Assembly: GCF_016433145.1 (NCBI RefSeq)
Contig: NC_058133.1
Location: 457,899,366-457,963,365, forward strand
Length of the DNA stretch: 64,000 nucleotides
DNA from: Gracilinanus agilis
Taxonomy: Eukaryota
Direction: 5' to 3'
Below are positions 19,583 through 50,152 of the stretch, piece by piece. The notes below the pieces were generated by a model. It did not search any database, was not told the origin of the DNA, and saw only the letters and a program-made list of their open reading frames with translations. How positions within the stretch are numbered: position 1 is the first letter of the stretch; each line of letters opens with the position of its first letter. Position numbers and translations under genes: made by a program.

Positions 19583-19795
<213 letters not shown>

Positions 19796-20719
19796 TTAAG
19801 TTACATACTTTAATTGGTTCTAAAATTAGATCAAGTTATATTAGATTCTATAAGACTAATCAGAAGAAAATTGTACCTGAAACAGTTTCATTTTTCAAGT
19901 GAGCAAAGTTTTTAAAAGCTAAAGAGATATATGAACAAACATATGTGGTATAGATATTTTAAGACATGCTAATCAATTATACAATGCTTCAAAATGCAAA
20001 TTTTTCAAAAATAATGCTTTACTATTCAATTTGGAGATCAGAGGCTAATAACATTGGGTTGATAGCTGAGTAGTGTTAACTATAAATCAATTCACACTAA
20101 CAGAGGAGGAGATAGTGCCATAACAAAACAATACCTATCCACATTTTATATTTGTCTTTGAAATGCAACAGGTAACATAGGCTCACTCACTTAAGCAAAC
20201 AGAAAGGCCTAAGAGTAGCCCTAAACAACATTATCCAAAAAGCCCAATTTCTCTTCAGTACTCCAACTTCTCCTTTCTTTGGCCTTCTGGTATAGTAGAA
20301 AATGATGGACTTGGGAGTAAAAAGGCATGGGTTTCATTCCTGGATCTCTTATTTACTAGCCATATAGCCAGAACAAGTTACTAAACCATTTGGAGCCTGA
20401 ATCTTCAGATATCTGAAAATGAGGCTAATACTTATATGTCTCCCTCACAGTTGTTTTGAGGAAATAAGCTTTTAAGTGCTATGTAACTATAAGTTTTTGT
20501 TACTCCTATAGAACTTGTTATTCTTTATCCAGTCTTATCTAGCCCCAGAGACTCACCAGTATCTTCACATATTCTGTGTGTTCACTCTTTATCAGAGATT
20601 CCTCAGTAAAGAATTTTATAACAGTCATTCATTTCTTAGTATGAATAGAAGATTATATATTCCCTCTCTCTAAGAATTTACAGTTTAAATCATATTTCAA
20701 GTTGGTAAATAAAAGACTT

Positions 20720-23700: not shown

Positions 23701-26096
23701 GCTCTTAAAAATTGACCTGTGACACCATGAGGTCAATCACTTACCCAGGATCACATGACCAGTATGTGTGAGAGGGAAGCCTTGAATCCAGATCTGATTT
23801 CAAAGCCACTACACCACTGCTGTCTCAAGGGGAAAATGTGAAGAAATCCACGTACTGGAGGCATGGAAGAAAGAAGTTAAGGGAGAAATAGAAAGGCTAT
23901 CATGGTGGAAATATATTAAAGAACAGCCCATAAAGCTTATGATTAGTTTCTGAATCTTAGATATTTTTATAGCAGTAATGGAGAGTAAGAATTATGCAGA
24001 CATCTGCTGGCATGCACTATTAAAAGCAGAAGTAGCTGTTAAATATTAAATTGCCTAAATGATCACTTTTCAAAAAAAATACTTAAGTGACAGAGGATAA
24101 AGAGACTGCAATTTTGGACTTGCTTCTGATCTTGAAGGATTAGTTGCTAGATTATGTAGTTAAAGAGGTAGAACCCCAATGACAACTCTCTCATGAAGGT
24201 TTGTTACAGCTAAAAAGGGAGAAGCAGGCCTAGGCATTGTCTGTGGTACACTAAAAACAGATTTCAACATTTCAAAGAATAGGTAGGATCCCACTGTCTG
24301 CAGTTCTGCAGGGGAAGCTGACCCAAGATAGATGAATTAGTCCCTAAAGAATTCTCACAAGTTATCTCAATGATAAGCAAGATGGAAATAGGAAATTCAT
24401 CAACTGAATTACAATTTATTTCCTAAAAGAGAAACAAAGGCCTGAAACTGATCATGAACTCAAAAATCCAGATCATGATTGCTAGGGCCCAGAATGAGGT
24501 AGGGTTATCAATGGATGTTGAGGACAAAAAAAAAATGGTTTTCCTCAATAAAGCTATATTTTCAAGAGGAAAAAAAAACCAAAAGAAGGTATGTGTCCAC
24601 AGGAAGTAGGGAAGGAATGGAATGGCAAGATAAGAGAAGACAAAATTACTTAACTCTTATTTTTTATAGAGACCTCTCAAAAGTCTTCCATGATCCCTGG
24701 TGGCTGTGTGAATAGATATGGAAACACTTCTGGAGAAGTTTATGAAAGAATTTTAGAAAGCTGACTGAGACAGGTAAAATGGCATGGGGCTTCAAAGCCT
24801 TTTGACAGTTTTGGGAACCTTGAGAGTTCCTCTCCCCCATCTCAACATTATGATGGGGGAGGTACAAAAGCCACAATGCTGATAAAGCTACAAGAGGCTG
24901 GAAAAAGGGAATAGGAAAAGGGGTGACTTCTGATGTTTGTGGAGGTTTTTGCTGTTTGATGCTTCTTTGGTCCCACAGAATTTACTATAATACAAAGTAA
25001 TGCTCCCATTTAGATCAGTCAGTATTTTTCACTTTAGTAGGAGCTCAGCACAAGTGGTTTTGAGTGGATGCTAACCCCAATGTGCCACAAACTAAATGAG
25101 AAAGCTTTCAAGGAGTTCACAATTGAAAGAAGGGCCCAGGGCTATATTACCCTCCTCAAAATGGCTTTCCTAAACTCTCTTCCTTAGGCCTTATAAATGA
25201 TCCCTTGCTTTCTCTCAGGGGACTTCTATTTTAATGAAGAAATTGAAGCTATCTTAAGCTCCTTCTCCCTGCTCTCTACCTCCTTCTATATCATACATAT
25301 TGTTTCTTCCTTTATTTGATAAAACAATGGGTTTTCTCCTAGTAAGGCTAAGCCTTCTAATTATATCCTAAATTCTCTTCATCTCTTCCAAGACTTTTCA
25401 TCTTTAAGAATTCCCTATCTTTTTCCCAGCCAAATGCTTCAAAAGAGCCATCTACTCTTGTTGCCCTGATCTTTATCTTGGGCTCTTTCCTCAGTCTCTT
25501 GAAGTCTAGTCTGGCTTTTAACCTACCTAAAACTGCTTTCTCCAAAAGTACCACCGACCCTCTTAGTTGCCAAATTTGACAGCCTTTCCTCAGTTCTCAA
25601 TGTTTCCAGTTGCTTTGATTTTCTCTTCTTTCTGGAAACTGTTCTCTCTCTTAGCCTTTATGATACTGCTCTCTGCTGGTCTCCTCAATCCTGACAGCTT
25701 CTTTTTATAGTCTCCTGGGTTTTTTAAGTGGACCCTAAATTCAGTGAACCAAAAGTTTAATATGATCATCTAAAAACCCAATATAATCCTGAGCACGCTA
25801 CACTAAAGCAGAAGTTCCAGGAATAAATGTGTGATAGTCACTATTATACTCTGTCCAGTTCAAATGAAGCTAGAATATTATTTCATTCTGGGCACTGAAT
25901 CTTGGGAAGGGCACTAATAGATAGGAGAAGATGCAAAGGATGGTAACAAAGATAGCAGAGGGCTTCAAATATGTGCCCAATGAGGAATGGTTGAAAGAAC
26001 TGGGAATACTGAACCTACACAAGACTGAGAAGGAATAGATAGCTATCTTCACATTTTTTATGTGAAAGAAGGATTAGGTATCCTCTGTTTTGCTTC
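20720..26096 (+). mobile_element. Fragmented ancient CR1/L3 LINE (ORF1 esterase, ORF2 EN/linker/RT end), interrupted by younger repeats
   Basis: IGTNDAARKN (20888), STLLPIEG, FGVWDHG, DKLH (21130); L3-like segments at about 21350-21450, 24000-24700 and 25730-26096. Confidence 0.7.
22540..22751 (+). mobile_element. SINE1_Mdo-like SINE with (AATG)n tail
   Basis: Canonical head and body; TSD tatctatccag / tgtctatccag. Confidence 0.9.
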
Positions 26097-26504
26097 TGTG
26101 AAGATGGGATTAATCCTACCTTGCCCATTTTTAGATCTAGTCACCTGTTAATTGAAATTTGGGAAAGGCCATTTAAAAGTATATATATATATATATATTT
26201 TCTATGGATACATGGGAACTATCAAACTACATTTCCCGTGGTCCAACAGGTTTCCGTTTCCGGTTCTTTGGGCGTGGGAATGCCTGCATCACCACGCAGA
26301 GGACAGTTTAAATGGGAGGAGAATCGAAAGTGGCTCTTTGGCTAGCAGGCACGGGAAGAGACGGGAGGTAACAATAATGGCGGAGGCGCCAGTTTTGAAT
26401 TCTTACAAGCGAGTGGTCTAATGATTTTATCTCTATCAGCATGGCTTTAATTAAACTACTAATTTATATTATTATATCAGTCTTTATCATTTTTAATCGT
26501 AACA
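26097..26504 (+). mobile_element. Probable solo LTR, CpG-retaining
   Basis: TG...CA ends; 'actacatttcccgtggtcc', 'tttccggtt', 'tttaaat'; 3' end 'atcatttttaatcgtaaca'. An LTR-like fragment follows to about 26820. Confidence 0.55.
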
Positions 26505-27352
26505 CACCAAAAGTGTAAACATCCCACTTACACTTGAGTTGGGGAGGTCTGTAACCCACAGGTGCAAGAGAGTCGGTGATGAATCAGAATTGACTGCCCC
26601 CTGGACAGTCCTAAGCAAAGCCTTTATTGTGTTTGGTACATGTAAAGTAGAGGAAGGCACTGGAAATGATGCAAAAGAAGCACCTTTAAAAGGTAGTGAC
26701 AACTTCCTCTGAGTCAGTTTCTTGTTAGTTCTTTGGAGTTGGAGTTAGAGACTCTGCTTGCTGGATCTGAGACCTGAAACCTTGGTGAGACTGTTCTTAA
26801 ATCTCTCCTTTTGAACCCTAATTTTCCCCCCTTATCCTTCAGAAAGCAAAGGAAGGAGCTAAACTAGAAGCTACCAAAAACCATGTTTATACTTCATGTA
26901 AAGAGAAATTTCTTAACATTAAAGTGAAATAGGTTACCCCTTTAATGAAGGTCTTTGCTCAAGAGATGATCATTTTTCCAGGTACAAATCAAACTTAATG
27001 ACCACTAAGATTCCTTCTAATTATAAAATTGTAATATTTTTTATATTTCATCCATCTCCCACCTTAGTTAGTTACTCAATGGCTTATCCTGGGCCATTTT
27101 CTCTACATTTCCTTTAGAGATTTCACTAGCGCTAATGACTTAAATTATCTCTAAGTGGCCCTCTTATATGAACCCATTCCAATATCCTCCTAATAGGTCT
27201 TCAAACAAGTCTTCACACTGCTGCCAAAATAAACTCCCTAAAATGTGGACCTACCATGCCCGTCACCTGTTCATGAGCCTTCAGGAACATTCTACCAAGA
27301 TAAAGAAAGAAGTCCTCAATTTGCCATTTAGAGCTGTGCATCATCTAGCTAA

Positions 27353-27541
27353 CAGTTGGCAACCTTTTTGGTTGTGAGAGCCATAAACGCCTGTGGAAGG
27401 AGGAGGATGGAGGCGGAAGGCGCTGGAATATGGGGCGGGGGCTGAAGGGCCCCCTGGGGCACATCCTGGGGCTCTGCCTCGCCTGGCTGGTCGGGAGGTA
27501 GAGCCAGATATGGCTCGAGAGCCATATGTTGCCTACCCCTG
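27353..27541. mobile_element. hAT MITE with GC-rich interior
   Basis: Both ends match the element at 50153-50358 (34/41 and about 31/33 nt); left TIR damaged, TSD degenerate. Confidence 0.75.
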
Positions 27542-28380
27542 AGCTACAGCCTACCTTCCTATTTATTTGGTATATAGCTTGCTTGGTATATAATTGTTTG
27601 CATGTTATCTCCCCCATTTAACTGTGCATTCCTTGAGGACAGGGGTTTTTCTGTGTCCTCAGTACTTTGTACTATGCCTGGTACATAGTAGGTGCCTAAT
27701 AAATACTTATTGATATGTTCTAGCAAAAATGACCTGGTTGACATTACTTGAACTATGTATTCCATCTCCTTCTCACATCTTGCATAGGTTTTCTCTAATC
27801 CTGAAATATACTCCCTATTCACCATTATTTCTCAGATCCTCTAGCCAACCCTCAAGACCTTCCCTTCAGCTAGCACTCTCTCCTTCCTCAGGCTAAGGCC
27901 TCTGTGTCAAGTGATGACAATGTCTGCACTGGGAGTCAAGGTTCTTCAAGACATTCAATAGAAAAGCTGCATCATATGCAAGAGAAATATCCTGAAGATT
28001 CCAAAAAAAGATCTCCAGGAGCTGTGAGTTATGCTTTTGCCACATATTCTCTGGATTCCCAAGGTTCTGGTGGAAGACTATGTCCCAGGCTTTTGAGGAG
28101 GACGTTTGTACAAACTGTTCTTACTATACCACCTTAGTAAGTAACCCTCTCTAAAAGCTAATTAAGAGATTTCCAGGTTAAGATGGCTGCAGAGTAGAAG
28201 CAATGTGCTTAACCTCTCCTAACCCACATACACATGACTCCTCAAAAGGACACAAAAACCAAATCCAGATGAACGACAGGACCCCACAATAGGGTGCAGC
28301 ATTGAAGGTACATGGGATTTGGGCATTTCCATGCTATGAGGGGGTGAAATAGCTCTCACTAAAATGCGAGCTGATCAAAA

Positions 28381-28427
28381 CATGCGCACATGTGCGCGCG
28401 CGCGCACACACACACACACACACATAC
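28381..28427. repeat. Alternating purine-pyrimidine tract (CG)n(CA)n
   Basis: catgcgcacatgtgcgcgcgcgcgcacacacacacacacacacatac, 47 nt of unbroken Y-R alternation. Confidence 0.9.
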
Positions 28428-28770
28428 CCCTACAGTGCCAAAGCCAGCACACAAGAGTTAGAGCAACTCTGGGGCATTCATTAAGTTCTTGGGATCGCCA
28501 GGGCCTGCTCCTGAGAGTAGCAATACTTAAGACCCCAAGAGGCTAAAGAATGCTGACTTTGAACACAGACCTTGAGCACAGACCTTGGGTGGGGACCTAG
28601 TGCAGAGGGGTGCCTGACTGTGGAAGCTGTGCTCTGAGACTCTGAAAGTAGCTTCAGGCAGAGGAACAAGCAAGGGGACCACCAGGAGTCTTGACCCTGA
28701 GAACAGCTAGACTTGAGACTCCAGGAGCCTAAAGAGTGCAGACCGTGGGCACAAGGATAAAGCTGAGAGG

Positions 28771-29736
28771 TGTAGTATACAGAATTGGGGGTTATAGTTT
28801 TTTCTAGCTTTGGCTGAGTTCCAAAAAGCTGTTAGAGGTTTTAGAATCTTGAGGAGAGGCAGTTGACTGGATCTTCTGTGAAGGGAGGAAGTCAATGAGC
28901 GAGCTCTTAGATTATCTAGCTTCAATATTGAAATTTAGCCTAGCATTGATATATTTACTTAAGAAATTATTATTTTAGATAGACCCTTTATATCTTCCTT
29001 TCCTAATACCACCCTGCCTTCCTTCCCTTACCTTAGTGGCTGTGGAGTTTATAAGGAGAGAAATTAGAGAGGAGTTAAATCTGTGAAGAGTTATCTAATT
29101 GACAGCATTATTTATAATTTAATCAAATCATCATTTATTCTCTTTAGATAGCATTTTGTAAAACTGAGTAAGGCAGGTCCTTACTCAGATTCCATCTTTA
29201 CTTCCCTTCCCCCACCTGAGGTTCCTGAAATAACTGATAGGGCTTTCCTTTAACCCACCTTCCTAACAAACATTCTTCAAACAATTAAACCCTTTGTGTT
29301 TCAATAGTTCTATTTAGTGTAATTTGTCTGTTAGTTATCAAGAGGGAAGAAGAGGGAAAGAGACAACATACTCTGGGCTCAGAGGGTAGCTGGGGCATCC
29401 ATCTTGAAGGAAGGTGTTACTTCAAAATAGGTCCCTTCCTGTGAAATTAACTAAAGCCTGTTTGTTAATTTCAGTCTAGTCTATTTCCCTCAGCTTGTGT
29501 TTGAATCTAAGTCCCAGTCTGTAAGCCTGCTGTGTTAGTCTGTTTAGTTTAACTTCTTTCTCCCAAGAAGATCTGTTTCCCTTCTGTGTTATACTCCTGA
29601 CTTCAGTCCTATTATACCCTGAATCTCCTTTAATCCCAGTCTACCTGTAGCCTAATTTATCCATTTACCAAGTCTCCAACATCCTCCTTTCAATTCCCTT
29701 ATCCCAAACACCTTTCCTCAAATTACCCCCATTACA
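28771..29736. mobile_element. Solo LTR (ERV1-type 4-bp TSD)
   Basis: TGTAG...TTACA termini; gagg duplicated at 28767-28770 and 29737-29740; L1 5'UTR resumes on both sides. Confidence 0.8.
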
Positions 29737-30149
29737 GAGGGCAGCACTGTGCTGTGACTCAGGTAAAAACTGCTCCACATCTAGATAGAGAGGTTGCCTG
29801 CCTCAACCAGACTTCTGAGAAAGATAAACAGCATAATAATAATGGCAAGCCATGCCCAAGAACATCCAAAGAGAAAGATCAAGAAGAACGCTTTAACACT
29901 TGATACTTTTTACAGAGAAAAAATCCAGACAATAGAGCAGACAGCAGAGGAGAACAAACAAGAAATCACATCCAAACCTTCCCAAAAAAATGAAAACTGG
30001 TCACAAGCTCTTGAAGAGTTCAAATGTGAGATCAAGAGAAAGATGGGAGAGATTTGGCAATAAAAGTGGGAAATAAAAGCTAATTGAGACCAGCTAAATA
30101 ACTGATATTAACTGATAATCCACATGGGAAGCACAATGGTTGGAATTCA

Positions 30150-30350
30150 TTTTTTATTTTTTTTATTTTTTTTTTAAACCCTTAACTTCTGTGTATTGGC
30201 TCATAGGTGGAAGAGTGGTAAGGGTGGGCAATGGGGGTCAAGTGACTTGCCCAGGGTCACACAGCTGGGAAGTGTCTGAGGCCGGATTTGAACCTAGGAC
30301 CTCCTGTCTCTAGGCCTGACTCTCAATCCACTGAGCTACCCAGCTGCCCC
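30150..30350 (-). mobile_element. Young SINE1_Mdo-like SINE
   Basis: TSD aatggttggaattca / aatgattggaattca; T-rich tail at left. Confidence 0.92.
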
Positions 30351-30479
30351 AATGATTGGAATTCAGGAGATGAATAGCATTATGAAGACTTCCTCAACCC
30401 TTAAGGAATGCCATTATAACTCTTGGGACAAATATAGGCTATGCTCTGGGAGACTGAGACTAAAATGTGTATTACGCTT

Positions 30480-30840
30480 TAAAAAAATAACGGCAAACTG
30501 AAGAGGTCCTATAGGATTGGAAACTGACAAATGTCTCAATTGTCAAAACTAAGGAAGAAAGTAGTGAATAGATCAAACTATAGACCAGCAAGGATGACGG
30601 AGCTCTGTCAAAATTTTAGAATGCATGTAAGTGATGGGACAAGCATTTAGAAAGAAGTCATAATTTCTTAAAGCCAGCATATTTAGAGCCATTTTGGTCA
30701 CACTAAGAATCTCATCTCCTTTTCTGACATGTTATTAGGCTTGGTAAGTCAGAGGATTGCAAGAGATATAGTACATCTAGATTTTAACAGAGCACTTAAC
30801 AAAATTTCTTATGATATCCTAATGGATAAAATGGAGATAA
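30480..30840 (+). mobile_element. CR1/L3 reverse transcriptase fragment
   Basis: DIVHLDFNRALNKISYDILMDKM resembles the CR1 RT consensus DVVYLDFSKAFDKVSH.IL..KL. Confidence 0.75.
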
Positions 30841-31674
30841 TACATTTTCTAATTCATTATCAGCTAATGTCCATGAACAATGAAATAACTGGCAGTTTTA
30901 CCAATGTTAACATTTTTGTGATTTAAGTATTATCAAGGTTACAAAAAGGTAAATAATTAGCCTTGACAAAAAAAATTATAAAAGACAGGTATAGTTTCAA
31001 TAAAAGGCATTCTCAATGGCTTCTAAAATAATAATTGGGGAAAAGAGATCCTTACATTGATATATCTCCCATACTATAATCTCTGCTTCCAGCCTTGCCC
31101 TTTTACCTATCATCCAGGAAAGTACTTTGTGGAGAAAGAGCTGCCACTACCAACAACAACCACCAACCATATGCCACTAATAAGCAGGCATCCCAGAGCC
31201 CCAATAATAGCAGTACTCTTAGACCACTAGCTCTGCTTCAAGCCTAGCTCCCAAAGACATTATCTAGGGAAGCAACCCTTGTGGAAATTCAACCTACTTG
31301 TCCAGAAAAAACAAAGTTCTCATTACCAAGACCCTTACTATTGTCAAATAGTTCAACAACAGAAATGGATATGATCCTAACTAAAAAAAAAGATATATTC
31401 ACGTCTGTTTTTTCATTGAACCCTAAGAACCACTGGGCCTTTCCATATAACTTGGAACTGAAACTTTCTATGAATGTTGTTTCCCCCAGCTCTCTTTGAG
31501 AGCAATTGTCTTCTTTTTGATTTGTATTCCCAGCACTTATGCTAATTCTTAATACATGGCAAAAATTTAATAAAAACTTTTTTATTTATCCTATAATTTA
31601 ACATATACTTTAACATATAAAGAGATAAATTTTATTATTTTAACCTGAACTGTGACAGTTATTCACAAAACTTA

Positions 31675-31911
<237 letters not shown>

Positions 31912-33749
31912 CTAAAGCAGTTTAATAAAAACTATACCTGGTTTAACATTGATTTCTTTTTAAATGTCTATAATGACTAATATTTATAATATCTATAGTA
32001 CCATATTAGTATTTACAACAAAATTTAGACATCAACTCAACAAGCATTTTTTATTAAGCCCTCACTATGAACCAGGCATAGTTCTAAGCATTGGGGACCC
32101 AAAAAAATCAGAGAGTGTGTTCTCTTTATTTTTTTTCCATCAACTATTTCACTTCTGAGCCTTATACTTTCTGCCCTAGATGTTAGATGAGACATATTTT
32201 CGAGACATGGAACCCCTAAACTAGCAGGGTACACATGCAGGTAGCTAATAGAGATACAAAAAAATTCCCACATATCGGTGGTAAGGTTCTTACCATTTCT
32301 GGGTTGGAGGAGGACAATCATTAAGGAAAGTTTCATGCAAGGGGTAGCTTCTGACTTGGATTTTAAAGGATGGGCAGAAATTTATTTAACCAAAAAGCAT
32401 GTATTAAACCCTTACTTTGCACCAGGCCCTGTGCAATAAGCTAGGGATGCAGAAACAAAAAATAAACAATGGCTGCCTTCATAAAGCTTACATTCTGTGG
32501 GTAAAGATGAAGAGGAAGGACATTCTAGAAATAAAGTGGGAGTGAACAAAAACATGGAGGCTGGCAGACAGAAGATATATGTGGGACCAGAAAATTATTC
32601 AATTTGACTAGAAAATTCCTTCTTTTACATTTCCCATTTCCCCTCAAAGTTCAACTCAAATATATCCAAAATACTTGGGATATTATGGTACTACAAATAA
32701 GATAATCAGAAATTAAATCCAGAGTTAGTTTATCATCAAGGGGCTAATTTGCACAATGCACATTTTGATACTGTTTGGTGCCATAAATTTTAAGAGTCTT
32801 GGTTATTAGATCACATATATTGAGTTGTAAGGCACTTGGGAGGTCACCTAGTTAAAGCATCTCATTTTATAGAAGAGAAAACTGAGGCTGAGAGGTTAAC
32901 TGATTTGTCCAAGGCCATAAAGGAAGTGAGTATCTGAGATGAAATTTGAACCCAGGTCCTCTGACTCTTAATCAGTGCTCTTTCTACTGTACCTTCTTTG
33001 CTCACAGAGATAATTCACAAGTAAGGGGAAAAAACAAGATGGACAAACCTCAAAGTGATATAAATGTCTAAAAAGAAAGTTGAGGAAAAAATGATAAAGT
33101 ACATTTTTAAATAAATGTTTAAATATATACATATATGAGTGTGTATATGTGTTATATGTGTATATGTTTCCATGGCTGTGATTACCAATTAGATAAAAGT
33201 AAGAGGCAGACTGATAATAAGCTGAGAAGGCATCCAAAAGAAAGTGGATTTGAAATCTAGAATTACCAGAAAAGATGTGAACAGTGGAGGAAAACAGGTG
33301 GCACTTGGTGAATTACCCCCACAACTTACAGGACAGTTTCAGGACAGAACTAAAGTGAAAGGAGGCTCATGACAAAGCCGAGTGAGCCACATATCAGGAA
33401 TGAGTGGTTCTGTAAGAAGGAGGATGAAGGGGTAAATCAGAGGTTCCTCAAAGCAGAACAATATGTAAAGTAGTTGGAATTTCCTCAAACAAAAATGCCC
33501 TTTGTTTTTATTTTAACAGTTGTTTATATCAAATAATAAAAATATCACCACCTAAATGATTTTTGTGAGTGGAAATGATAAAATAAAGGATTGAACTGGC
33601 AAAAGCCTCGTCAACTTCATATTTATAAGAAGATCTGAAGAAAATTAATTACATTTTGGGGTTTATCTAACACCTCATTTCTGAAAATATAACAAAAACG
33701 TTTAAGTGCTTTAGAGGGCACTTGCATTATTGAAAAAGCAGGTGTCAAA

Positions 33750-34550
33750 GATGGAGCCAAGATGGCAGAGTAGAAGCACAGAAAGCTGGAATTGCTCTGA
33801 GAATCCTTTCCACTCAACCTTAAAATAGTGCCTCAGAATGAATGGAGTGACAGAACCAACAAGGGGATGGAATGAAGCAACTCCTGCAGAAAACAACTTG
33901 AAAGGTCGGCAGAGAAGGTCTATTTCAGTGGAGTGAGAGAGGAGCACTGCTGGCAGTAAAGCTATGCCAAGGAGTTCAAGCTGCCAATCTAACACTCCAG
34001 GTTCTGAACCTGGGCACAAGCCAACTTCAAGACTCCAAGACCCTACCTAAGCCAACAGCCGAGTACCCTACACTTACCCCTTAAAGTTCCAAGCCCTAGG
34101 CACAAGCCTGCAGTGAGGCCCCAAGCCCTAGTATAAGGCAATCCATGGTACCTGACCCATTCAAACCAAAGGGGAGGCCCAGAGCCACTGCCCAAGCCTG
34201 CAGGAAGGCCCCAAGCTCCATTACAGAGTAGTCCATAGTGCACCTGGGCTGGTGAAGCTTAGAGTGAGGCTCCGATTCCCTGCCCAAGTTTGCAGTGAAG
34301 ACCCAAACCCCACCACAACCCCAGCACAATCCACAGTGCACTAGGAAAATGAGCAAATGGCAAAAAAAAAAAAAAAAACCCACCACCACCACACACAGAG
34401 AATATCTAACCATAGAAAATTATTATGGAAACAAGGAAGAATAAGACACAGACTCAGAAGAAGGCAATGAGATCAAAGCAGTCACATGCAAAACTTCAAA
34501 GAAAAATGGAAATTGGTCTCAGGCTCTAGAAGAGCTCAAAAAAGAATTCA
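33750..34550 (+). mobile_element. L1 5'UTR plus ORF1 N-terminus only
   Basis: 'gagccaagatggcagagtagaagc' start (AAGATGGC 33759-33766), GC-rich repeated UTR, ORF1 'atgagcaaatggc...aattggtctcaggctctagaagagctcaaa' (NWSQALEELK). Confidence 0.75.
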
Positions 34551-34890
34551 ATAAACATTTATTAAGTGCATACCATGTGCAGGTATTATACTAAGCACCG
34601 GGACTAAAAAAAGGCAGATGACAGTCTCTCTTTTGATCATCTTCCCTAAGAAACTTATATATTCATACTATATAAATCTATTACCCAATCTAGATCTCAG
34701 TGACTGGTCGGAATATATCTCCACCTCTTGGCTTCTCTGGCTTCCTTCAAGTCCCAGTTAGAATCCCATCCTTTACAAGAAACCTTCCCTAATCTCCTTT
34801 AATTCTAGTACCTCCCCTCCAATTTATCATGCATATAGTTTATTTGTACATAATTTAAATGTTGTTCCCCCATTAAACTGTGAGATCCTT

Positions 34891-34931
34891 GAGAATAGGA
34901 CTTGTCCTTTGAGAATAGGACTTGTCCTTTG
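34891..34931. repeat. Tandem duplication of about 20 bp within an L2 tail
   Basis: ttgagaataggacttgtcct occurs twice in tandem. Confidence 0.8.
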
Positions 34932-35230
34932 CCTTTTTTTCAGCCCCTGGGTGTTACATAGCACCTGGCACACTTAGTAAATGTTTACTGACTGACTTCT
35001 CAACTCTTGCCCTCATACTATGAGACTTCTATATATTATGATGCCCCCTCGAATACGCAACTTCCTAGTTCCTTAATCTATGCAATTCCCCAAACCTACT
35101 TCTCCATTCTACCTTAATTACATCTTCTACCTTACCATTTTCCATAAACTTCAATTTCCCTGTTCACAAACTCTTAACTTCCTTTATCCAGTCATAATCG
35201 TTCATCATTCCATTTTTATTTAGTTTACAT

Positions 35231-35425
35231 AAGTGGTTCCCAAACTTTTTTGGTCTACCGTCCCCTTTTCAGAAAAAAATACTACTTAGAGCCCCCTGGA
35301 AATTATGAAACTATTTATTGAACTCAAAATAGAAAGCAATACAAAAAAAAGTGTGGCCATCACCACCTCACTGGATCGCTGCAGCACCCACCAGGGGGCA
35401 GTGGTGCCCACTTTGCAAATTACTG
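35231..35425. mobile_element. hAT MITE (195 bp) with CTCF-consensus site
   Basis: Perfect 8-bp TSD gtttacat (35223-35230, 35426-35433); ends aagtggttcccaaa / tttgcaaattactg. Confidence 0.85.
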
Positions 35426-36590
35426 GTTTACATGAACCCTAATTCTCTGCTTCCTCCTCAAATTGACTTCTTTTCCCTCTATTCCTTGCTTCTTTCCCAG
35501 GCTCCTGCGCTGGCCAAACTCTCCTTTCACTCCTTAGTGAATCAACTCAATCCTACACTATCTTCTACTCTCCATCTTCTTGTCCCCCAATTTTATCATG
35601 GATCAATGACCCTGACAAACTCCAATACTAGATTACTCCCATCTTGTCTCCTTTGCTATTTAATATAGCTGGAAGAAATTACAAAACTCTGCTGACTGGG
35701 CCCACTACAAACTCATATTATCTAAAGTATCTGGGCCCTAACAGCAGGAATGCAAACATTCTATTTCCTCCTAATAGGTTCTCTGTGCTGCTTTTCATAT
35801 CAATTATTCCAAAAGTTCTAGTCTCTCCTTAAGCATCACACTGTAACTTTTCCTCCCATTTTCTCAGGTAAGGACTTCATCTCACTAGTACACTGAAGGA
35901 GATCATTCACCAAACTTACCTCCTTATCTCATATCAGACACTCTAGTTTAAGATGAAGAAACATTTCTCTTTGCCAAGACAAACTTCTTTAACAAATCTC
36001 TGAGCACTCCAGCAAACAGCCCCTACTATTATTCTCCAACCCCATCTTCAATCTCTCCCATCTACTCACTCCTCCCCTGATGTCTACAAACATTCCCAAG
36101 TCTCCTCCATCCTTCAAATTAAAAAAAAATTTAAGCCCTTGCTTGGCAAACTACCTCCACTAATTATTGTCCTATATCCCCTTATAAGGCTAAACTTATC
36201 CAGAAAGCAAAATACAACTGATGCTTTTGATAAGCCTTTCATCTCACTCTCTTCTAAAGTGCTCTACAATCTGGCTTCTGATCTCTTTACCTGAAACTTA
36301 CCGATTTAACTGAAAGTTACCAATCTCTTAGTTGCCAGATCTAATAGCCAGAGATGTTATATCCCTAACAAAAGCTAAAGGAAGCATTTGCTATGTCTTG
36401 CATAAAGAGCAAAAGGCTTAAAATTAAAGGATAGGGGAAGGAGAATATATATATGGAAAGAGAGAGAATAATATATCCCCATCCAAGTTAGATAAAAGAG
36501 AGAAGCTACAGAGTATAATAGTTGAGGCATCCAAAAATTCAAAGGAAACAAAATCCAAGAAAAGAGAAAATAGTAAAAAAAAGTTTTTTC

Positions 36591-37600
36591 CTATATACAA
36601 ATCCCACAAATTTAGACAACAAACATGAGGTACTAGAGGTCCTAAGGCAAAGGAGCAAATTTGACATCATAACCATCATTGAGATGTGGTGAGATAAAAC
36701 CCATGATTGGGTCATGGATTAGTATATCTCACTCAAAAGGGGAGAAGAGGTTGTGGTAATGTTATTTTGTAAAGAAATGCTCAAATAAGGAAATCCCAAA
36801 AACAGAGAAGAAAGGCAGAACAGTATGTGGGTGAAGGTGTAAAAAAAGTTATGTCACTGAAGTACACTATAGACTACTACACAGGGAAAAAAAGTCAACA
36901 AGCATGAGTGGTTAAGTAACTTGTGCAAGGTTACACACCTAGTAGTGTCTGAGGCAGGTTTTAGACTCAGGTCTTCCTAATTCTTATTCCAACTCTATGC
37001 CCTGTGCCAATGGGCTCTTTGAGAAGTAATCTCCTTCCCATTCATAGAGGCCAGATGATCACTTATTAAATAGATTGTAGTCAGGATCTTTTTTCAGGGT
37101 AAGGGTTGGACTAGATGGTCATAAAAGTCCCTTCCAATTCAAGAATTCTCTTAATATCAACAAAGAATGCAAGTCTCCTTGTTATGCCACATTTCTTTTT
37201 TTTTTTTTAAATCACTAAACAAAATCCTGTGGTTGCTTCTAAGCCGCAGTTCTAATGCTAATAAAAACAACAAAGCAGGGGTTTTTAAAGATATTTTGGG
37301 GAAAAGAGAATCAGAGAGAGAGGAAAATGAGATAGAGAAGACTGAGCAACTTAATTCTTACTTTTTCCTCTGCCAAAAATAAAATGATCTGGGGACAATG
37401 AACAACAATGTGACTAATCAAGGAGTAAAGAGATAATAGGAGTACCTGTCATCAATAAACTCAAGTCACCAGAACTATAGAATAGAATATTACCCTGGAG
37501 TCCTCATAATCAGTAGCTACAATGTAAGTTGCAATTAGTGATCTTTAAAGGGCTACAGAGAATCTGAGAAGTACCTCAGCAAAGGAGGGTTAATGTTACC
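36591..37600 (+). mobile_element. CR1/L3 ORF2 endonuclease and linker fragments (a SINE and MIR intervene)
   Basis: LYTNPTNLDNKHEVLEVL...FDIITIIEMW*DKTHDW resembles CR1 APE 'LYTNARSMGNKQEELE...YDIIGITETWW'. Confidence 0.75.
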
Positions 37601-38131
37601 TTGATTTAAAAAAAAAGATACAACATTGCTAATATGGAAATATTTTGCATGACTGTATATGCATAAACGATATCAAATTGCCTGCCATCTCAGGAAAGGA
37701 GGGAGAAGGAGAGAGGGAGAGAATTTGGAACTCAACATTTTAAAAAATGAATGTTAAAAGTTATTTTTACATGTAATTGGGGGAAAAAATTTTTAAAGGA
37801 AAAAGCAGACCTTCAGAACTTAAGGTCAATAAGTTTGATTTAAATTCTTGTGAACATTTTCCCTAGGAAAAAATTTAACATCTGCATTATAAGCCCTATT
37901 AATTTCAACTAGGTGTAGAATATGAAAGGGTTTTGTTGGGAGTTTTTTTGCCTTTGACCAAACAAAAATTTTCATGTATAAACCATTAAGCATATTTTAC
38001 AGTTAAGAACTCTGATTTTCCACGTGTTAGTCAATAAGTATTTATTAAGCATTTGCTAAACATGTCAGGTATAGTGCTAAGCATTTAGTAAAGTAAAAAT
38101 TAGTTCCTGTCCTCAACAAGAATATACTTTA

Positions 38132-38319
38132 GAGGGCAGCTGGGTAGCTCAGTGGAGTGAGAGTCAGGCCTAGAGACAGGAGGTCCTAGGTTCAAACCTG
38201 GCCTCAGCCACTTCCCAGCTGTGTGACCCTGGGCAAGTCACTTGACCCCCATTGCCCACCCTTACCAATCTTCCACCTATGAGACAATACACCGAAGTAC
38301 AAGGGTTAAAAAAAAAAAA
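38132..38319 (+). mobile_element. Young SINE1_Mdo-like SINE
   Basis: Perfect 14-bp TSD aagaatatacttta (38118-38131, 38320-38333); A-tail. Confidence 0.95.
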
Positions 38320-39059
38320 AAGAATATACTTTAATGGGGAAAACTATTAGTCTCTATTACTGCTCTTTTAAATGTTAACTTCAATGTTACTCTCTCTTCC
38401 AAAGTAAAGTCAGTTGGGGTAAAAGAATTATAAACATAATAAATGCCACCAATAAGAATCTAGGGCATTTCTCCTCCAAGTTGTAATTTACACATCCTTT
38501 GAAAAATGTAAGAAATGAACCAAATGATTTAATTCTCAGAACACTGTAATGTTTTATCAATGCCTTCCTCAATCCCGCTCCTTCCCTAACAGAACTCTCT
38601 TAGAACCATGTAGTACAGTTATGCAAAACCAAATGATGCCCTGATCATCTCTAGTAAGTAGCACATGCCTCATATTCTGCATCTGTAGTCTCTTCCCTCT
38701 CTGTGAGGAGGTATATTTCATCAGACCTCTAGAGTCAAAATTTGTTTTTGCCTTGATCTGGGTTTTGAGGTCTTTTAATGATGTTTTCTTAGACGTGTAG
38801 TCATCGTGTATGTTGTACTCTTGGCTCTGCCACACATGGTATACACTTGCTCTCTGTTAGATGACTCAACTAGTTGGACTCAGATGGATTTAGGTGGTAC
38901 ACCAGTCTCTAGGAGGTCACCATTGCATTTACATAAGTAAAAAATAGGGCTTAGATGTCATTTATGATATGAAATTTTTCCCTTTGTTTCCCACTAATTT
39001 GTTCAGAAAAAAATCCTTTAATTAGTATCACAGAATACCTGTCATATTAATAATACTCA

Positions 39060-39221
<162 letters not shown>

Positions 39222-40159
39222 CTAAAGGTGCTCTGATGCCCATAATCATTAACAGTCAAAGGTCCACCAGGCCTTCAAGTTGAAGGAATTTTTACTCCCA
39301 AAGAACTATTCATACTAAACCTTGTCTGAGAATCAAACTGTAGCCTAAACTACAAAAACTCTAATGGGCAAAATAGGAAAAGTTAATAGAATAGAAACCA
39401 TGCATATTATGCCACAGCACTCCTTGGCCTACAGATGATAACACAGATAATCAGACCCTCCATAGAAATAGACTTTTGAGAGCTGATATTACAATGAACC
39501 TGAAGTTTAAAAGTACAAAAATATCAACAGGCAAAAGCCAATTCCTTTTTGGTGTGGTAGAGGATTATCAAAATCTAAAGGACTAGCAATCACAGGACTT
39601 TACACTTATGAATAGATATCTAATTTCAAAGCTTCTTACCCTCATGAAAATATTCCTAATACTTATATTGGGAAAATAAGGTGCATGTAGGCTATGAACT
39701 GAGATAGTTAAAGAATTAATTAAGGGGCATATCTCAGTTACAGAGTGGCATTTATTAAACTATCTTCTATAGAAATCTATCTGTAAACAGTCTTGAAAAA
39801 ATTTTGATGCCAGCAATATTTTACTCTAAAACACTTAATATGAAATTGTGCATAAAATGACACAATACTGAATAGATTACAACTTAATTGAATTCAATAA
39901 AATGAAGACTATTAAAAATTCAATTTCTTCTGCTTTGCTATGAAAATTACCCAACTCCATTTAATTAAGGGTCTTCTTTCTTCCCACTCCAAGATAAGCA
40001 TTTATAGGTTAAAAGATATTTTAAGCCCCTAACTATATTCAGTGACCAAATTAATTTGTAAAAATGGAACCATTTTTGTGGCCATGAAAAAATATTTAAT
40101 TTTAAAAAGCAGAAACTAAGGTCTCAAACTGTACACTACTGCAAAACTTCTATGGCATT

Positions 40160-40520
40160 ATGACCTCTATATGGGTTCTCTGTCCATCAACAGAGATTAG
40201 AGCCTTTTGTCATCTAGTATGGTTCTTGTCTACTTCCTTCCAAAAATTGTGCACAGATCTGTACATGCTAGAGATCTTCTTTTACTATGTTAGGAATATC
40301 AATATCTTGATCTAGCCATCCTGTCATCATAATCTCATTTTATGCCCAATTCATCTCTTTTTGCATTCATACACATCTGATTACTAATTGCTCTTACTGT
40401 TTCATCAAAAGAAATAACTGCAGCCAACTTATCACATTCAACCAACATGGAATTCCATGACTCATAGCCATTACAGTATTACTTGGAGAATAATGGAGTT
40501 AAAACTCTAGGCTTTTCCAG
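40160..40520 (-). mobile_element. RTE LINE 3' end fossil
   Basis: Minus strand 'ttttaactccattattctccaagtaatactgtaatggctatgagtcatggaat...agaagatctctagcatg...gacaagaaccatactagatgacaaaaggc' resembles the marsupial RTE 3' end. Confidence 0.55.
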
Positions 40521-41612
40521 TAAGGAACAATCCATTATCAATAAAAGTGCCATGTGCTTTGTTAGATATAATCTAACCTATTCTTTAACCTAATCAACTT
40601 TCAGCTTGGTTCATAGTTCATGTGCAGATTTCATGCAAGATGCATGTACAGGCAGACCAACTCAGTAGGCTGCTCCTTCCATATGTTATACTCTGGGTAA
40701 CAAGCACTCTTCTTTTATTTGCTATTTCCTGTATAGATTTCTAGGTTGAGATTGATATCTTTAGCAAGACATGGATTTAAATGAGATGTCCCATAGTGTT
40801 CCAGAACTTAAAGCAATCAAACACAAAATTATTTGTAAGCAGGATCATCTAAAAATCTATTTGGACTTTAAACACAAGACTCATTTGAGGATATTAGCAA
40901 ATATCTGTAGTGATTATGTTTTCCTACTTTATGCTGCATTTATTCCATTAAATATACAGTCATTTAAAGTTTGCACAGGGCTTTATATGCATTAACTCAT
41001 TTGACATTCATTATCAGATGAGATCATTAAACAAAATTATTTCTGCAGTTTCATCAACAAATCTTGTATGATCTTAATACACACATAAGAAATAGCAAAT
41101 TTGAAAACCAAGACAAATGTTTTGTTTGGTCTTTATTTTGCTATCAACTCTAGATCTCTAACTATATGATTTTATATTCTCAATATAATTATATCAATTG
41201 TGTATTTGAAGACGAGGTTCATACCTGCATGCATTTTCATCTATAATGATAAGATAGAGCATAATTAAATAATAGAGAGCAAACTGGACTGAAATTTTAA
41301 AAAGTCTAATTCACTAAGGGTCATTTTATTGGCCTAAGAATAGTAATTTCTTTTTCCAGTTATGGTTATCACACAAATAAGGTGAGTTTTTTTTTTCCTT
41401 TTTAAAAAACACAATCCAATCAAACTCAAAACAGGCACTCACACACTATCACTCTCTCTCTCATCTTATTCACTGGTTTTGAGTAAGACTATTTCTTCAA
41501 TCTTCCCAACCTTTTCGAGCTCAAAATCTACAAAATTAAACCTAATCATGTTTAGTGATACTCATTGATCTAAAAATAAAGATCCTTTAGGGAAAAAAAT
41601 TTCAAATATTAC

Positions 41613-41725
41613 ATGTTCCGTGTTAATATGTTCTCATCAATATCCAGTCCAGCAAGCACCTCAATGGACTCATGATATTTTAGCCTCCATAACAGCTTAC
41701 AGTTGGCACATCCCAAATCTGCAAC
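41613..41725 (-). CDS. HENMT1: HENMT1 exon 4: VADLGCANCKLLWRLKYHESIEVLAGLDIDENILTRN(I)
   Basis: Acceptor 'ttttatttatag', donor GTAATA; 113 nt, phase 0 to 2; SAM-binding motif I (DLGC) and acidic motif II (GLDI). Missed by the ORF track. Confidence 0.95.
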
Positions 41726-46147: not shown

Positions 46148-46276
46148 CTTTTGAGGTTTGTGTTTCCGTACAAAATCTAAAACAAACTTATGGCGCTGTT
46201 CAGATAATGAAGGTGTGAATTTAATATTCTCCTTTACTTGAACTCCTTGAACGTCTGAATCAACCATAACGTCACT
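46148..46276 (-). CDS. HENMT1: HENMT1 exon 3: SDVMVDSDVQGVQVKENIKFTPSLSEQRHKFVLDFVRKHKPQK
   Basis: Acceptor (t)n-ag at 46278-46277, donor GTTGGT; 129 nt = 43 codons, the same count as the recalled human segment CSSVV...EPKK; internal in-frame ATG at 46267. Confidence 0.92.
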
Positions 46277-47890: not shown

Positions 47891-47911
47891 CTGGTCCTTG
47901 AACTTTTCCAT
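47891..47911 (-). CDS. HENMT1: HENMT1 exon 2 coding part (start codon): MEKFKDQ
   Basis: gttATGg Kozak context, 21 nt then CAG|GTAATT donor, phase 0; same length and ME....Q pattern as human MEENNLQ. Confidence 0.75.
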
Positions 47912-47922
47912 AACAATTGTTT

Positions 47923-48098
47923 TTAATCACTATCTTCTGTCTTAGAATCAACACTAAGTATCAGTTCCAAGGCAGAAGGACTAGGCAATTGGGGACAAGT
48001 GACTTGTCCAGGGTCGGGTCACACGGTAAGAAAGTGTCTGAGGCCAGATTTAAATCCAGAACTCCAGACTCTATCCACTGAGCCCCAAAAGCTGCTCC
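47923..48098 (-). mobile_element. Older SINE abutting the HENMT1 start codon
   Basis: Minus strand 'ggagcagcttttggggctcagtggatagag...ttgattctaagacagaagatagtgattaaaaa'; flanked by an 11/14 direct repeat that contains the ATG. Confidence 0.85.
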
Positions 48099-48854
48099 CA
48101 TCATAATTTTTTAAAACCTAAGTCTTGTTAAGCAAAATCCTAGTAGCCTTTATATTCACTTCTCATTAATGGTATAATGTCATCATAAGTAAATCACAAA
48201 ATTGAGAAGGTAATTAAAACTCAGTGAAAGGGGACTTGGGATGGGATGGGGGGGATGGTTTAGATTTTACAACTTCTGAGCATCTCACTGGTCATTCTAA
48301 CTGAAAAGAAGCAATAAAGATGTAAAATAACAGACTGTAATCTGTGCAAAAGGTGCTTCTTTGTTTCTTTTCACCAACCTATTTTTTTAAAAAATGAGCA
48401 TCTCTACCACTGATCCTTACAATGCCAATCATATCTCTTTTTCAGATTTTTCCCTTTAAAACAGTATGACCTATCCACGAACTAAAAGAGTGCATCAGTT
48501 TTCTCTCCTGTAATGTTGGCTTTAGAAGGCATCTTGAAGGCCATCCACTCTAACAACTTCATTTTACAGAGGAAAGAAATTAAGAGCAAAGTTTATGCAA
48601 AGCCCCTAAGGCAATTTCCTAACTGATGTTATGGATATTCTTTAAAAAAAACAAACTGGCATGCTCATGTCAATCCACTAGCTTAATTCTGTAACTTTTG
48701 AGCACTGACCTCCATTTAAGTTGTACAGTTCTTATCGTAAGTGTAAGCCCAAGAATAGGTTCACCTAATGGCGCAAGTAATGCTCCTCTTCTACTCCACA
48801 CCCAGGCTTCGGGCCTTCTGCCTCTCACATGGGGCGTGCCAGGTCCTGACTCAC

Positions 48855-49080
48855 CTCTCTCGAGGAAGCAAGTGCCCTGCAGGGCCCCAAGATCATACCC
48901 CCCCACCCGCCAGGCCTCAGAGCTTCCAGGCTGCCTCCGCCCCCGCCCCCGCAGGCGCCCAATGGCCTCTCTCTCCAGGTCGGCCCTTCTAGGAGAGGAG
49001 GCTAACCCGCCCTAGCCTGCGGCTGCTGCTCCCGCGGCCACCACCAATGCCGCCTACTTCCGGCTTCCTGCCCCTACCGC
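48855..49080 (-). other. HENMT1: Predicted HENMT1 exon 1 (5' end approximate)
   Basis: Lies in the CpG island; consensus donor GAG|GTGAGT with GT at 48854-48853. Confidence 0.55.
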
Positions 49081-49400
49081 TCCCGCTTCCGGTGCGGCTC
49101 AGAGGCCCGCAAACCACGCGGTTTGGTTGAGATTGGGCATGCCCAGGTGTCGAGCCCTCACAGCTCTGCTCCCAACCGCCCTCGGGGATAAGGAGCCGGT
49201 GTGGGCCGGAAGACCTCGGGGTATAGGTAATTAGCTCTCCAGAGTTCCCGTACTTCGTGCTTCTAGGCTGCCTTGGTTGGAGGGGCAGCTGTAAATAGTA
49301 TGGGGCCCAGGCGGAGGCAAGGGGAGGTGCAGAGATTCAGAGTCAGGCCACAGCCCTCGCGGGAAGCCGCGAGAAAAGGTGTGCAAGACCCCTGTTCAGC
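48900..49400. promoter_or_regulatory. CpG-island promoter of HENMT1
   Basis: High GC and CpG in an otherwise CpG-poor window; GC boxes (ccccgcccc about 48941), ETS/GABPA-type cttccgg at about 49058 and 49087, E2F-like gcgggaa about 49359. Confidence 0.8.
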
Positions 49401-50152
49401 TTTCACGCAGGCAACTAAATAGCATTTTGGAAGGACCTACTTTGTGCCAAGCACAGGGTATACCAAGAAAAGCAAAAAAAAAATTGCCCCTGTCCACACG
49501 GTGCTCACCATCTAAAGTGGGCTGCCAGCAAGGGAATCCAAACAAGATAGAGACGGCATGAACTAGGGCTCGTCTCAGAGAGAAGGCCCCAAGGCCAAGG
49601 AGAAGGGGGAAAGGATTCTTGCAGAAGGGAGATGAGGAAGCCAGGAGGTGATAAGGGAGATTGTTCCAGCCTTGTTAAAACCGGATGAAATTCTGCAATC
49701 CTCTAAGGACCTAATATAAACAGAAGATACAAATGAGGACTCATTTGTCTCCTTGGCCTTCATGGAGCTTATGATAAGAGTGTAGTTTTATGGCTGTTTA
49801 AGGTTTGCCCAGAACTGATATCTAAAGAGTCTGAAGACTCACTAGTCTAGCTCTCTGCCCCCAAACGACTTTTGGGTGATCAGAACTGACCCAGATGGAT
49901 GCCTTTGCTCTTTCCCTCAGGTTTTCTTGAACATTACACAGCCCCTTCCCTCATTATCCTTTCCTTGTGGCCTCCCCCACACCCTCTGTTCTCAGTCCTC
50001 TGGCCCAGCACCAGCAGTTCAGAGCCTGTTTTCCCAGTTACACAGTTCAGAACTTTGCAGTGCTGGTGCTTCAGGGTTGCAACTCCCAGCAGGCTTTTGT
50101 GCCAGATTGGATGCTGAGGCCCAAGTAAATCTCTACAGCCTATACTCTGAAC

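What the first reader, a model, noticed from the sequence alone, without database searches (positions are those of the whole stretch)
47891..48119. A SINE inserted at the HENMT1 start codon, duplicating the ATG and creating a SINE-encoded uORF
Seen (minus strand): ...acttAG|gtttt-aaaaaattatgATG-[SINE 48098-47923]-aaacaattgttATG-gaaaag... The two 14-mers (48112-48099 and 47922-47909) match 11/14, both end in ATG, and the first follows a tt/aaaa endonuclease site. The upstream ATGATG opens a 47-codon ORF (48104-47961, MMGAAFGAQWIESGVLDL...LLPWN*) ending 49 nt before the real ATG. There is no AG between the SINE tail and the real ATG, so any mRNA using this exon carries SINE sequence: either the whole SINE (acceptor 48119-48118) or part of it through a cryptic acceptor. 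Inference: a retrotransposon rewired translation initiation or splicing of a core piRNA-pathway gene, and its mRNA could be a piRNA target.
Basis: partly seen in the sequence, partly recalled or inferred. Interest (0 to 1): 0.78.

Follow-up and report, generated by a model that had tools for sequence, protein, structure and literature searches.

The report
SINE inside relic HENMT1 start exon
In American opossums an old SINE inserted exactly at the ATG of what looks like the ancestral start-codon exon of the piRNA methyltransferase gene HENMT1, but every marsupial gene model seen skips that exon, so this is most likely a tolerated insertion into a relic exon and not a rewiring of translation.

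Summary
The window is Gracilinanus agilis (identical to GCA_016433145.1), with HENMT1 on the minus strand. A sense-oriented, diverged CORE-SINE (47923-48098) is flanked by two ATG-ending repeats, and a 47-codon ORF starts in the upstream repeat. Monodelphis has the same SINE, so the insertion is specific to didelphids.

- The 7-codon MEKFKDQ|GT exon matches the placental start exon in position and form (blue whale MAENNIE|GT).
- No marsupial HENMT1 protein among those listed (14 species) starts there.
- The RefSeq product of this species joins an exon-1 ATG (48896, donor GAG|GTGAGT) directly to the next exon (46276). The SINE and mini-exon therefore lie in annotated intron 1.
- The listed marsupial proteins all contain the MVDS methionine in that next exon (VMEYG in Dromiciops), and most start there.
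- The mini-exon has decayed in Sarcophilus, is frameshifted in Dromiciops, and is undetectable in four other Australasian marsupials (three diprotodonts and the bilby).
- The uORF is 9 codons in Monodelphis.
- All candidate acceptors are weak.

No RNA data were available. This is an ordinary retroposon insertion with a tidy evolutionary story.

The parts
47923..48098 (-). Diverged marsupial CORE-SINE (MAR1/Mar1_Mdo-like), in the same orientation as HENMT1. It has a tRNA-like head with a 14-nt internal deletion, a CORE region and a LINE-type tail ending TTAAAAA. The 3' end is ambiguous by about 3 nt.
   Evidence: Aligns with other SINE copies in the window. About 80% identical to a crude majority consensus; the deletions are shared with the Monodelphis orthologue. 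Absent at the orthologous site in Sarcophilus and Dromiciops.
48099..48112 (-). Upstream copy of the target-site duplication (AAAAAATTATGATG). It carries the duplicated ATG, plus a second ATG most simply explained by a T-to-G change in Gracilinanus.
   Evidence: Dromiciops has AAAAATTATTATG once. Monodelphis has a 4-nt shorter version with a single ATG.
47909..47922 (-). Downstream copy of the target-site duplication (AAACAATTGTTATG). It ends in the ATG of the mini-exon.
47891..47911 (-). Seven-codon mini-exon ORF MEKFKDQ ending in phase 0, with donor GT at 47890-47889. It is the likely relic of the ancestral therian start-codon exon and lies inside annotated intron 1.
   Evidence: in frame with the next exon. 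The combined length up to the conserved (I/K)(K/Q)F is 27 residues, the same as in the placental representative. Blue whale encodes MAENNIE on a separate 7-codon exon with the same spacing to a CpG island and to the next exon.
47961..48104 (-). 47-codon ORF opened by the duplicated ATG and running through the SINE. It would be a uORF only if the whole SINE were in an mRNA.
   Evidence: Only 9 codons in Monodelphis. No gene with this product is on record.
48118..48119 (-). The polypyrimidine tract is weak.
   Evidence: rough score -3.1, against 2.8 and 5.7 for two real acceptors of this gene. The AG is kept in Monodelphis and Dromiciops and is GG in Sarcophilus.
48855..48896 (-). Coding part of annotated exon 1 (MILGPCRALASSRE), followed by the consensus donor GAG|GTGAGT.
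   Evidence: 100% match to the N-terminus of G. agilis XP_044531852.1. Sequence. The locus start of L008 maps to 48896.
46148..46276 (-). Next coding exon (SDVMVDSDVQ...), preceded by a T14-AG acceptor. The ATG at 46267-46265 is the start of most marsupial HENMT1 models.
48900..49500 (-). CpG island, the likely HENMT1 promoter and exon 1.
   Evidence: GC 0.60, CpG o/e 0.63 at 49001-49500.
12224..41725 (-). Remaining HENMT1 coding exons, approximately 41725-41613, 39195-39061, 31858-31676, 19772-19595 and 12649-12224.
   Evidence: tblastn; junction sequences; PDB match of the 31.7-kb exon to small RNA 2'-O-methyltransferase, E 4e-22.

Best explanation
After didelphids split from the Australasian marsupials plus Dromiciops, and before Gracilinanus and Monodelphis diverged, a sense-oriented CORE-SINE retrotransposed into the small second exon of HENMT1. 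Insertion was by target-primed reverse transcription at a TTTTT/AAAA-type nick. It duplicated about 13 nt (AAAAATTATTATG), so one ATG copy now sits 5' of the SINE and the other stays joined to GAAAAG.

That exon is the positional counterpart of the placental 7-codon start exon. Marsupials appear to have stopped depending on it: their mRNA models join exon 1 directly to the next exon. Translation then starts at a marsupial-wide methionine there (MVDS...) or at lineage-specific in-frame ATGs in exon 1. The SINE therefore landed in an exon that was already optional. At most it completed the exon's silencing by weakening exon definition, and it now lies in intron 1 as a relic.

Shown: the insertion, the duplication, its lineage restriction, the annotated skipping, and the decay in other marsupials. 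Inferred: homology with the placental start exon, the order of events, and the absence of the exon from real transcripts.
For: - The window is identical to the G. agilis assembly, and its RefSeq HENMT1 product maps as exon 1 (48896-48855) joined to 46276.
- Monodelphis has the same SINE with the same internal deletions.
- Sarcophilus and Dromiciops have clean empty sites with one copy of the target.
- None of the 21 marsupial proteins listed starts MEKFKDQ-like. All contain the MVDS methionine (VMEYG in Dromiciops).
- Sarcophilus has lost the acceptor AG and the donor and has a stop after 5 codons.
- Dromiciops has a +1 frameshift and two independent SINEs beside the exon.
- In Petaurus, wallaby, koala and bilby the exon is not detectable.
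- Blue whale has the same architecture: CpG island, about 0.7 kb, a 7-codon ATG exon with GT donor, about 1.5 kb, next exon.
- Candidate acceptors are weak.
- The uORF is not conserved.
- Exonic retroelement insertions in NF1 mostly cause exon skipping (PMC3219598).
Against: - No transcript data could be reached. RefSeq models can miss minor or testis-specific isoforms.
- Monodelphis isoform X2 was never seen among the listed proteins.
- In both didelphids the mini-exon keeps its ATG, an open frame and a GT donor, and 25 nt are identical. That is what a still-used exon would look like, although 14 equally long identical runs occur in the same intron.
- Nucleotide similarity between the whale and marsupial exons is not above chance, so homology rests on position, length and form only.
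Confidence: 0.6

Rival explanations
1. The mini-exon is still a working start exon in didelphid germ cells. Its mRNA carries all or part of the SINE as 5' leader, and the duplicated ATG opens an inhibitory uORF or a cryptic SINE acceptor is used. HENMT1 translation or splicing is thus controlled by a retroposon and perhaps targeted by SINE-derived piRNAs.
For: - ATG, open frame, phase 0 and GT donor are intact in both didelphids.
- Both upstream ATGs and the mini-exon ATG have a purine at -3.
- There is no AG between the SINE tail and the ATG in Gracilinanus.
- RefSeq may miss minor isoforms.
Against: - The RefSeq model of this genome and Monodelphis isoforms X1 and X3 skip the exon.
- The uORF is 47 codons here and 9 in Monodelphis.
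- All candidate acceptors are weak.
- The Monodelphis donor is GTCATT.
- Sequence identity over the exon is no greater than in many other stretches of the intron.
- Read directly from the sequence: including the full SINE exon after the exon-1 ATG runs into a stop, TGA, inside the SINE.
Confidence: 0.15
2. The MEKFKDQ|GT stretch is a chance ORF in intron 1, unrelated to the placental start exon. The SINE is then an ordinary intronic insertion whose target happened to end in ATG.
For: - Whale-marsupial nucleotide similarity is not significant.
- By my own rough estimate, a 2.6-kb AT-rich intron should hold a few ATG-N18-GT open frames by chance.
- No marsupial protein uses it.
Against: - The second codon is GAA (E), as in the placental representative.
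- It has the same 7-codon length and phase 0, and gives the same 27-residue distance to the conserved motif.
- Its spacing to the CpG island and to the next exon matches the whale.
- ATG-GAA and CAG|GTAAT are retained in Dromiciops, a lineage outside the didelphids, where surrounding identity is about 70%.
Confidence: 0.2

Closest known systems
MAR1 / Mar1_Mdo CORE-SINEs of marsupials (PMC2000970, PMC3403934)
   Same: tRNA-like head, a central CORE-like block (GTGTGACC..TGG.CAAGTCACTT), a LINE-type tail of about 60 nt ending in a short A-run, and flanking target-site duplications. Several better-preserved copies of the same type lie in this window.
   Different: No Repbase consensus was available, so the subfamily is not assigned. 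This copy has 14-nt and roughly 11-nt internal deletions and about 20% divergence. The RTE partner could not be checked in the sequence at hand.
Exonic Alu/L1 insertions that cause exon skipping (NF1 series, PMC3219598)
   Same: A retroelement with a TSD lands inside an exon at a T-rich/A-rich nick site. [quoted passage not shown]
   Different: Those are recent disease alleles with RNA proof. This is an old, fixed insertion into an exon that was probably already dispensable, and no RNA evidence was available.
TE insertions into 5' exons and TE exonisation (Sela et al. 2007, PMC2394776)
   Same: A SINE inside a 5' leader or start exon, with the potential to add upstream ATGs and leader sequence.
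   Different: That work rests on EST/cDNA-supported inclusion. Here the annotated transcripts exclude the element.
Placental HENMT1 start exon (blue whale MAENNIE|GTAAGG, L007)
   Same: 7 codons, phase 0, GT donor, about 0.7-1 kb downstream of a CpG island and about 1.5 kb upstream of the exon encoding ..VVDG/..MVDS.
   Different: In the placental proteins seen (whale, placental representative) this exon supplies the start. In the marsupial models seen it is skipped, and sequence similarity is not above chance.

Membership tests
HENMT1 / Hen1 small-RNA 2'-O-methyltransferase gene | Methyltransferase-domain exons matching solved HENMT1 structures | tested here: met
   The exon at 31857-31675 matches PDB 5wy0/4xcx 'Small RNA 2'-O-methyltransferase' at E 4e-22.
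HENMT1 / Hen1 small-RNA 2'-O-methyltransferase gene | Identity with an annotated orthologue | tested here: met
   All exons match G. agilis XP_044531852.1. The locus DNA is identical over 42,676 nt.
Marsupial CORE-SINE (MAR1/Mar1_Mdo type) | tRNA-related head | tested here: inconclusive
   The head aligns with the GGGGCAGCT..GCTCAGTGG..GGTTCAAATC heads of other copies. It carries a 14-nt deletion. ARAGORN and Rfam find nothing.
Marsupial CORE-SINE (MAR1/Mar1_Mdo type) | Conserved CORE block between head and tail | tested here: met
   The block ..GTGTGACC..CTGGACAAGTCACTT.. is shared with all SINE copies aligned. That this block is the published CORE rests on my own knowledge.
Marsupial CORE-SINE (MAR1/Mar1_Mdo type) | 3' tail shared with an RTE-clade LINE partner | not testable with these tools
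   All ten tail matches in the sequences searched (window and loci L001-L006; hits only in the window and L001) have a SINE head upstream, and no LINE copy was present. The RTE-3 partnership for MAR1 is taken from PMC2000970.
Marsupial CORE-SINE (MAR1/Mar1_Mdo type) | Target-site duplication confirmed by an empty orthologous site | tested here: met
   Sarcophilus and Dromiciops carry the target once.
Exonised SINE / TE-derived uORF | Element present in a mature mRNA | not testable with these tools
   No transcript data. The annotated products skip it. The uORF peptide is not on record.
Exonised SINE / TE-derived uORF | Usable acceptor upstream of or within the element | tested here: inconclusive
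   With a rough position-weight score built from my own knowledge, all 22 AGs score at most 0.9, against 2.8 and 5.7 for real acceptors. No calibrated splice predictor was available.
Exonised SINE / TE-derived uORF | uORF conserved in the sister genus | tested here: not met
   47 codons in Gracilinanus and 9 in Monodelphis.
Orthologue of the placental HENMT1 start exon | Same length, phase and position in the gene | tested here: met
   7 codons, phase 0, GT donor; spacing to the CpG island and next exon as in blue whale.
Orthologue of the placental HENMT1 start exon | Sequence similarity above chance | tested here: not met
   Local alignments of the whale exon region to the marsupial sites were matched or beaten by 95 to 745 of 1000 shuffles.

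The most novel reading that the evidence does not exclude
Didelphid germ cells still make a HENMT1 isoform that starts at the ancestral ATG. Its leader is the sense SINE with a strong upstream ATG. Output of the piRNA methyltransferase would then be throttled by a retroposon-derived uORF, or by nonsense-mediated decay, and could be sensed by antisense SINE piRNAs, giving a feedback loop between a transposon family and the pathway that silences it.
Probability: 0.08. Interest if true: 0.65.

Novelty: new member of a known kind. Interest (0 to 1): 0.3.

Why it matters
It is a clean, dated example of a SINE landing on a start codon and regenerating it through the target-site duplication. It also exposes a lineage difference in how HENMT1 begins: placental mammals use a 7-codon start exon, while marsupials skip it and start in exon 1 or at a methionine in the next exon. 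That is useful for annotating marsupial piRNA-pathway genes and as a phylogenetic marker for Didelphidae. As it stands, it does not show any new regulatory mechanism.

Tried and rejected
- Rfam on 44-52 kb found nothing, and ARAGORN found no tRNA in the whole window.
- The first protein search, seeded with a bird HENMT1, returned only birds.
- Profiles on a 237-residue scaffold (P0001) did not separate marsupials from birds in a local test. A profile on a crinoid scaffold did.
- Whale-marsupial nucleotide homology of the exon was not significant.
- A search for a LINE copy carrying the SINE tail found none.
- A look-up of the uORF peptide found nothing on record.
- A second cluster listing to find Monodelphis isoform X2 returned the same 15 members.
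- Earlier findings of the scan held nothing at this place and nothing on HENMT1.
- The perfect conservation of the mini-exon between the two didelphids was rejected as evidence of constraint: it is one of 14 runs of 25 nt or more in the intron.
- Structure prediction and complex prediction were not used because they do not bear on the question.

Full report
**What is there.** On the minus strand the order is:
- AG at 48119-48118
- GTTTT
- the 14-mer AAAAAATTATGATG (48112-48099)
- a 176-nt element (48098-47923)
- the 14-mer AAACAATTGTTATG (47922-47909)
- GAAAAGTTCAAGGACCAG, then GTAATT

The 47-codon ORF at 48104-47961 and the short MEKFKDQ frame are both in the mechanical ORF list. The window has no N runs.

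**The element is a SINE.**
- It aligns with other copies in the window, from a GGGGCAG-type 5' end, through a tRNA-like head and a CORE-like block, to a tail ending TTTAAAA.
- Against a crude majority consensus of 13 didelphid copies it is about 80% identical, with two internal deletions.
- Published descriptions of marsupial CORE-SINEs (MAR1, Mar1a-c_Mdo) fit this build, and MAR1 is reported to share its 3' end with RTE-3_MD (PMC3403934; PMC2000970).
- I could not assign the subfamily, and I found no LINE copy with this tail in the DNA at hand.
- Rfam and ARAGORN see nothing.

**Whose gene.**
- An exon at 31857-31675 matches solved structures of small RNA 2'-O-methyltransferase at E 4e-22.
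- tblastn with family representatives places seven coding exons on the minus strand.
- To reach marsupial proteins I searched exon by exon, by reference.
- Retrieval used a profile alignment in which each exon translation was a separate row on a crinoid scaffold (A4). That profile served for retrieval only. Every conclusion below rests on direct comparison afterwards.
- The N-terminus MILGPCRALASSRE of Gracilinanus agilis XP_044531852.1 matches 48896-48855 at 100%.
- The G. agilis locus (GCA_016433145.1, CM028238.1) is identical to the window over 42,676 nt.
- P0021, a 50%-cluster representative that looks like the human protein, was used only as a local protein query and for its N-terminus. 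No contig that I take for human was fetched, saved or compared.

**Where the annotated start is.**
- Exon 1 reads ATG (48896) plus 13 more codons, then GAG|GTGAGT.
- The next coding exon starts at 46276 behind a T14-AG acceptor and reads SDVMVDSDVQ....
- The RefSeq product joins these two directly. The SINE and the MEKFKDQ stretch therefore lie in annotated intron 1.
- I listed 21 marsupial HENMT1 proteins from 14 species. None begins with anything like MEKFKDQ.
- Most begin MVDS... at the ATG equivalent to 46267. The others carry lineage-specific extensions, mostly from exon 1.
- Monodelphis isoforms X1 and X3 were seen. X2 was not.

**Is the mini-exon real in evolutionary terms?**
- MEKFKDQ ends in phase 0, and the next exon starts in phase 0.
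- The joined frame has 27 residues up to the conserved (I/K)(K/Q)F, the same as in the placental representative MEENNLQ-CSSVVDG....
- In the blue whale, MAENNIE is a separate 7-codon exon followed by GTAAGG. It lies about 0.7 kb downstream of a CpG island and 1.5 kb upstream of the exon encoding CNSVVDG.
- In the window the same distances are about 0.75 kb (without the SINE) and 1.6 kb.
- Nucleotide similarity between whale and marsupial sites is not above shuffled controls.
- I therefore rate homology with the placental start exon at about 75-80%, resting on position, length, phase and the ME start.

**The empty-site test.**
- Monodelphis aligns colinearly at about 83-84% identity and has the same SINE with the same deletions.
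- In Sarcophilus the alignment blocks on either side of the SINE abut and overlap by about 15 nt. The sequence there carries the target once, followed directly by ATGAAAAAGTTAAAC.
- Dromiciops likewise reads TTTTTAAAAATTATTATGGAAAAATTCATAGGAACAGGTAAT.
- The duplication is about 13 nt, AAAAATTATTATG.
- The second ATG in Gracilinanus is most simply a T-to-G change in the upstream copy. Monodelphis has lost 4 nt there.
- The target's bottom strand reads TTTTT/AAAA at the inferred nick, as expected for target-primed reverse transcription.
- The insertion happened after didelphids separated from the Australasian marsupials plus Dromiciops, and before Gracilinanus and Monodelphis split.

**State of the exon elsewhere.**

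| Species | State of the mini-exon |
|---|---|
| Sarcophilus | Upstream AG is GG, donor gone, stop after five codons |
| Dromiciops | ATG-GAA and CAG\|GTAAT kept, one extra base breaks the frame, two independent antisense SINEs beside it |
| Petaurus, tammar wallaby, koala, bilby | No match above shuffled controls |

The methionine in the next exon is present in every marsupial protein seen, where whale, goat and the placental representative have valine (the bear sequence is too divergent to align here). The simplest order of events is that marsupials could already do without the exon before the didelphid insertion.

**Is it used today in didelphids?** No transcript data were within reach.

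Against use:
- The annotated models skip it.
- The Monodelphis donor is GTCATT.
- The uORF is 9 codons in Monodelphis.
- The 25 nt identical between the two didelphids over the exon is one of 14 such runs in the intron.

For use:
- ATG, frame and GT survive in both genera.
- The contexts of the ATGs are good.

Exonic Alu and L1 insertions in NF1 mostly caused exon skipping (6 of 13) and rarely left element sequence in the mRNA (2 of 13) (PMC3219598). That fits the annotated outcome here.

**Verdict.** The claim that a retrotransposon rewired initiation of a piRNA-pathway gene is not supported by the gene models or by conservation. The best reading is a lineage-specific SINE insertion into a relic start exon. 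A literature search found no paper on HENMT1 gene structure in marsupials, so the case is unreported but of a familiar kind.

Noticed in passing
window 63000-64000: A second CpG island at the window edge (GC up to 0.74, CpG o/e 0.85). The stretch 63218-63147 (minus) resembles the N-terminal extension of the dasyurid HENMT1 isoforms (MTRCAATSRALPSL...), which in Sarcophilus is encoded about 30 kb upstream of the MVDS exon. Here it contains a stop. It may be a distal alternative promoter or first exon, or the promoter of a neighbouring gene.
   Followed up: partly
L005 (Dromiciops) about 8990-9150 and 9215-9350: Two independent antisense SINE insertions flank the Dromiciops copy of the mini-exon, one inside its presumed leader and one about 30 nt past its donor. 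The same small region was therefore hit repeatedly in different marsupial lineages.
   Followed up: partly
window 49108-49058 (minus): The stretch GPLSRTGSGSGRGRKPE followed by GT matches the Petaurus N-terminal extension (..GGGRKPQ joined to SDIMVD). This suggests alternative exon-1 donors within the CpG island in different marsupials.
   Followed up: no
window 41613/39195 exon junction: Koala and bilby isoform pairs differ by TRNIYRLHTG versus TRNMLHTG (2 residues). This points to an alternative donor or acceptor at this junction. The window reads ..AAT AT|GTAA at the donor.
   Followed up: no
window 14615-15096 and 18347-18828: 482-nt inverted repeat, 94% complementary, arms 3.25 kb apart, in the intron between the last two HENMT1 exons. 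Further arms continue the pairing (15168-15442 with 18013-18285, up to 100%). It looks like a recent inverted duplication or a pair of young repeats.
   Followed up: no
window 469-654, 22541-22726, 30159-30350, 38134-38318, 53781-53972, 57361-57552: Copies of a younger SINE family; most are 88-96% alike, and the 22.5-kb copy is more diverged. They have the same head but a different 3' part from the HENMT1 SINE. They probably belong to the dominant recent opossum SINE family.
   Followed up: no
window 46277-46280: The acceptor of the MVDS exon reads TTAGAG. The Antechinus X1 protein joins at DVMVD rather than SDVMVD, which is compatible with a tandem acceptor 3 nt apart.
   Followed up: no
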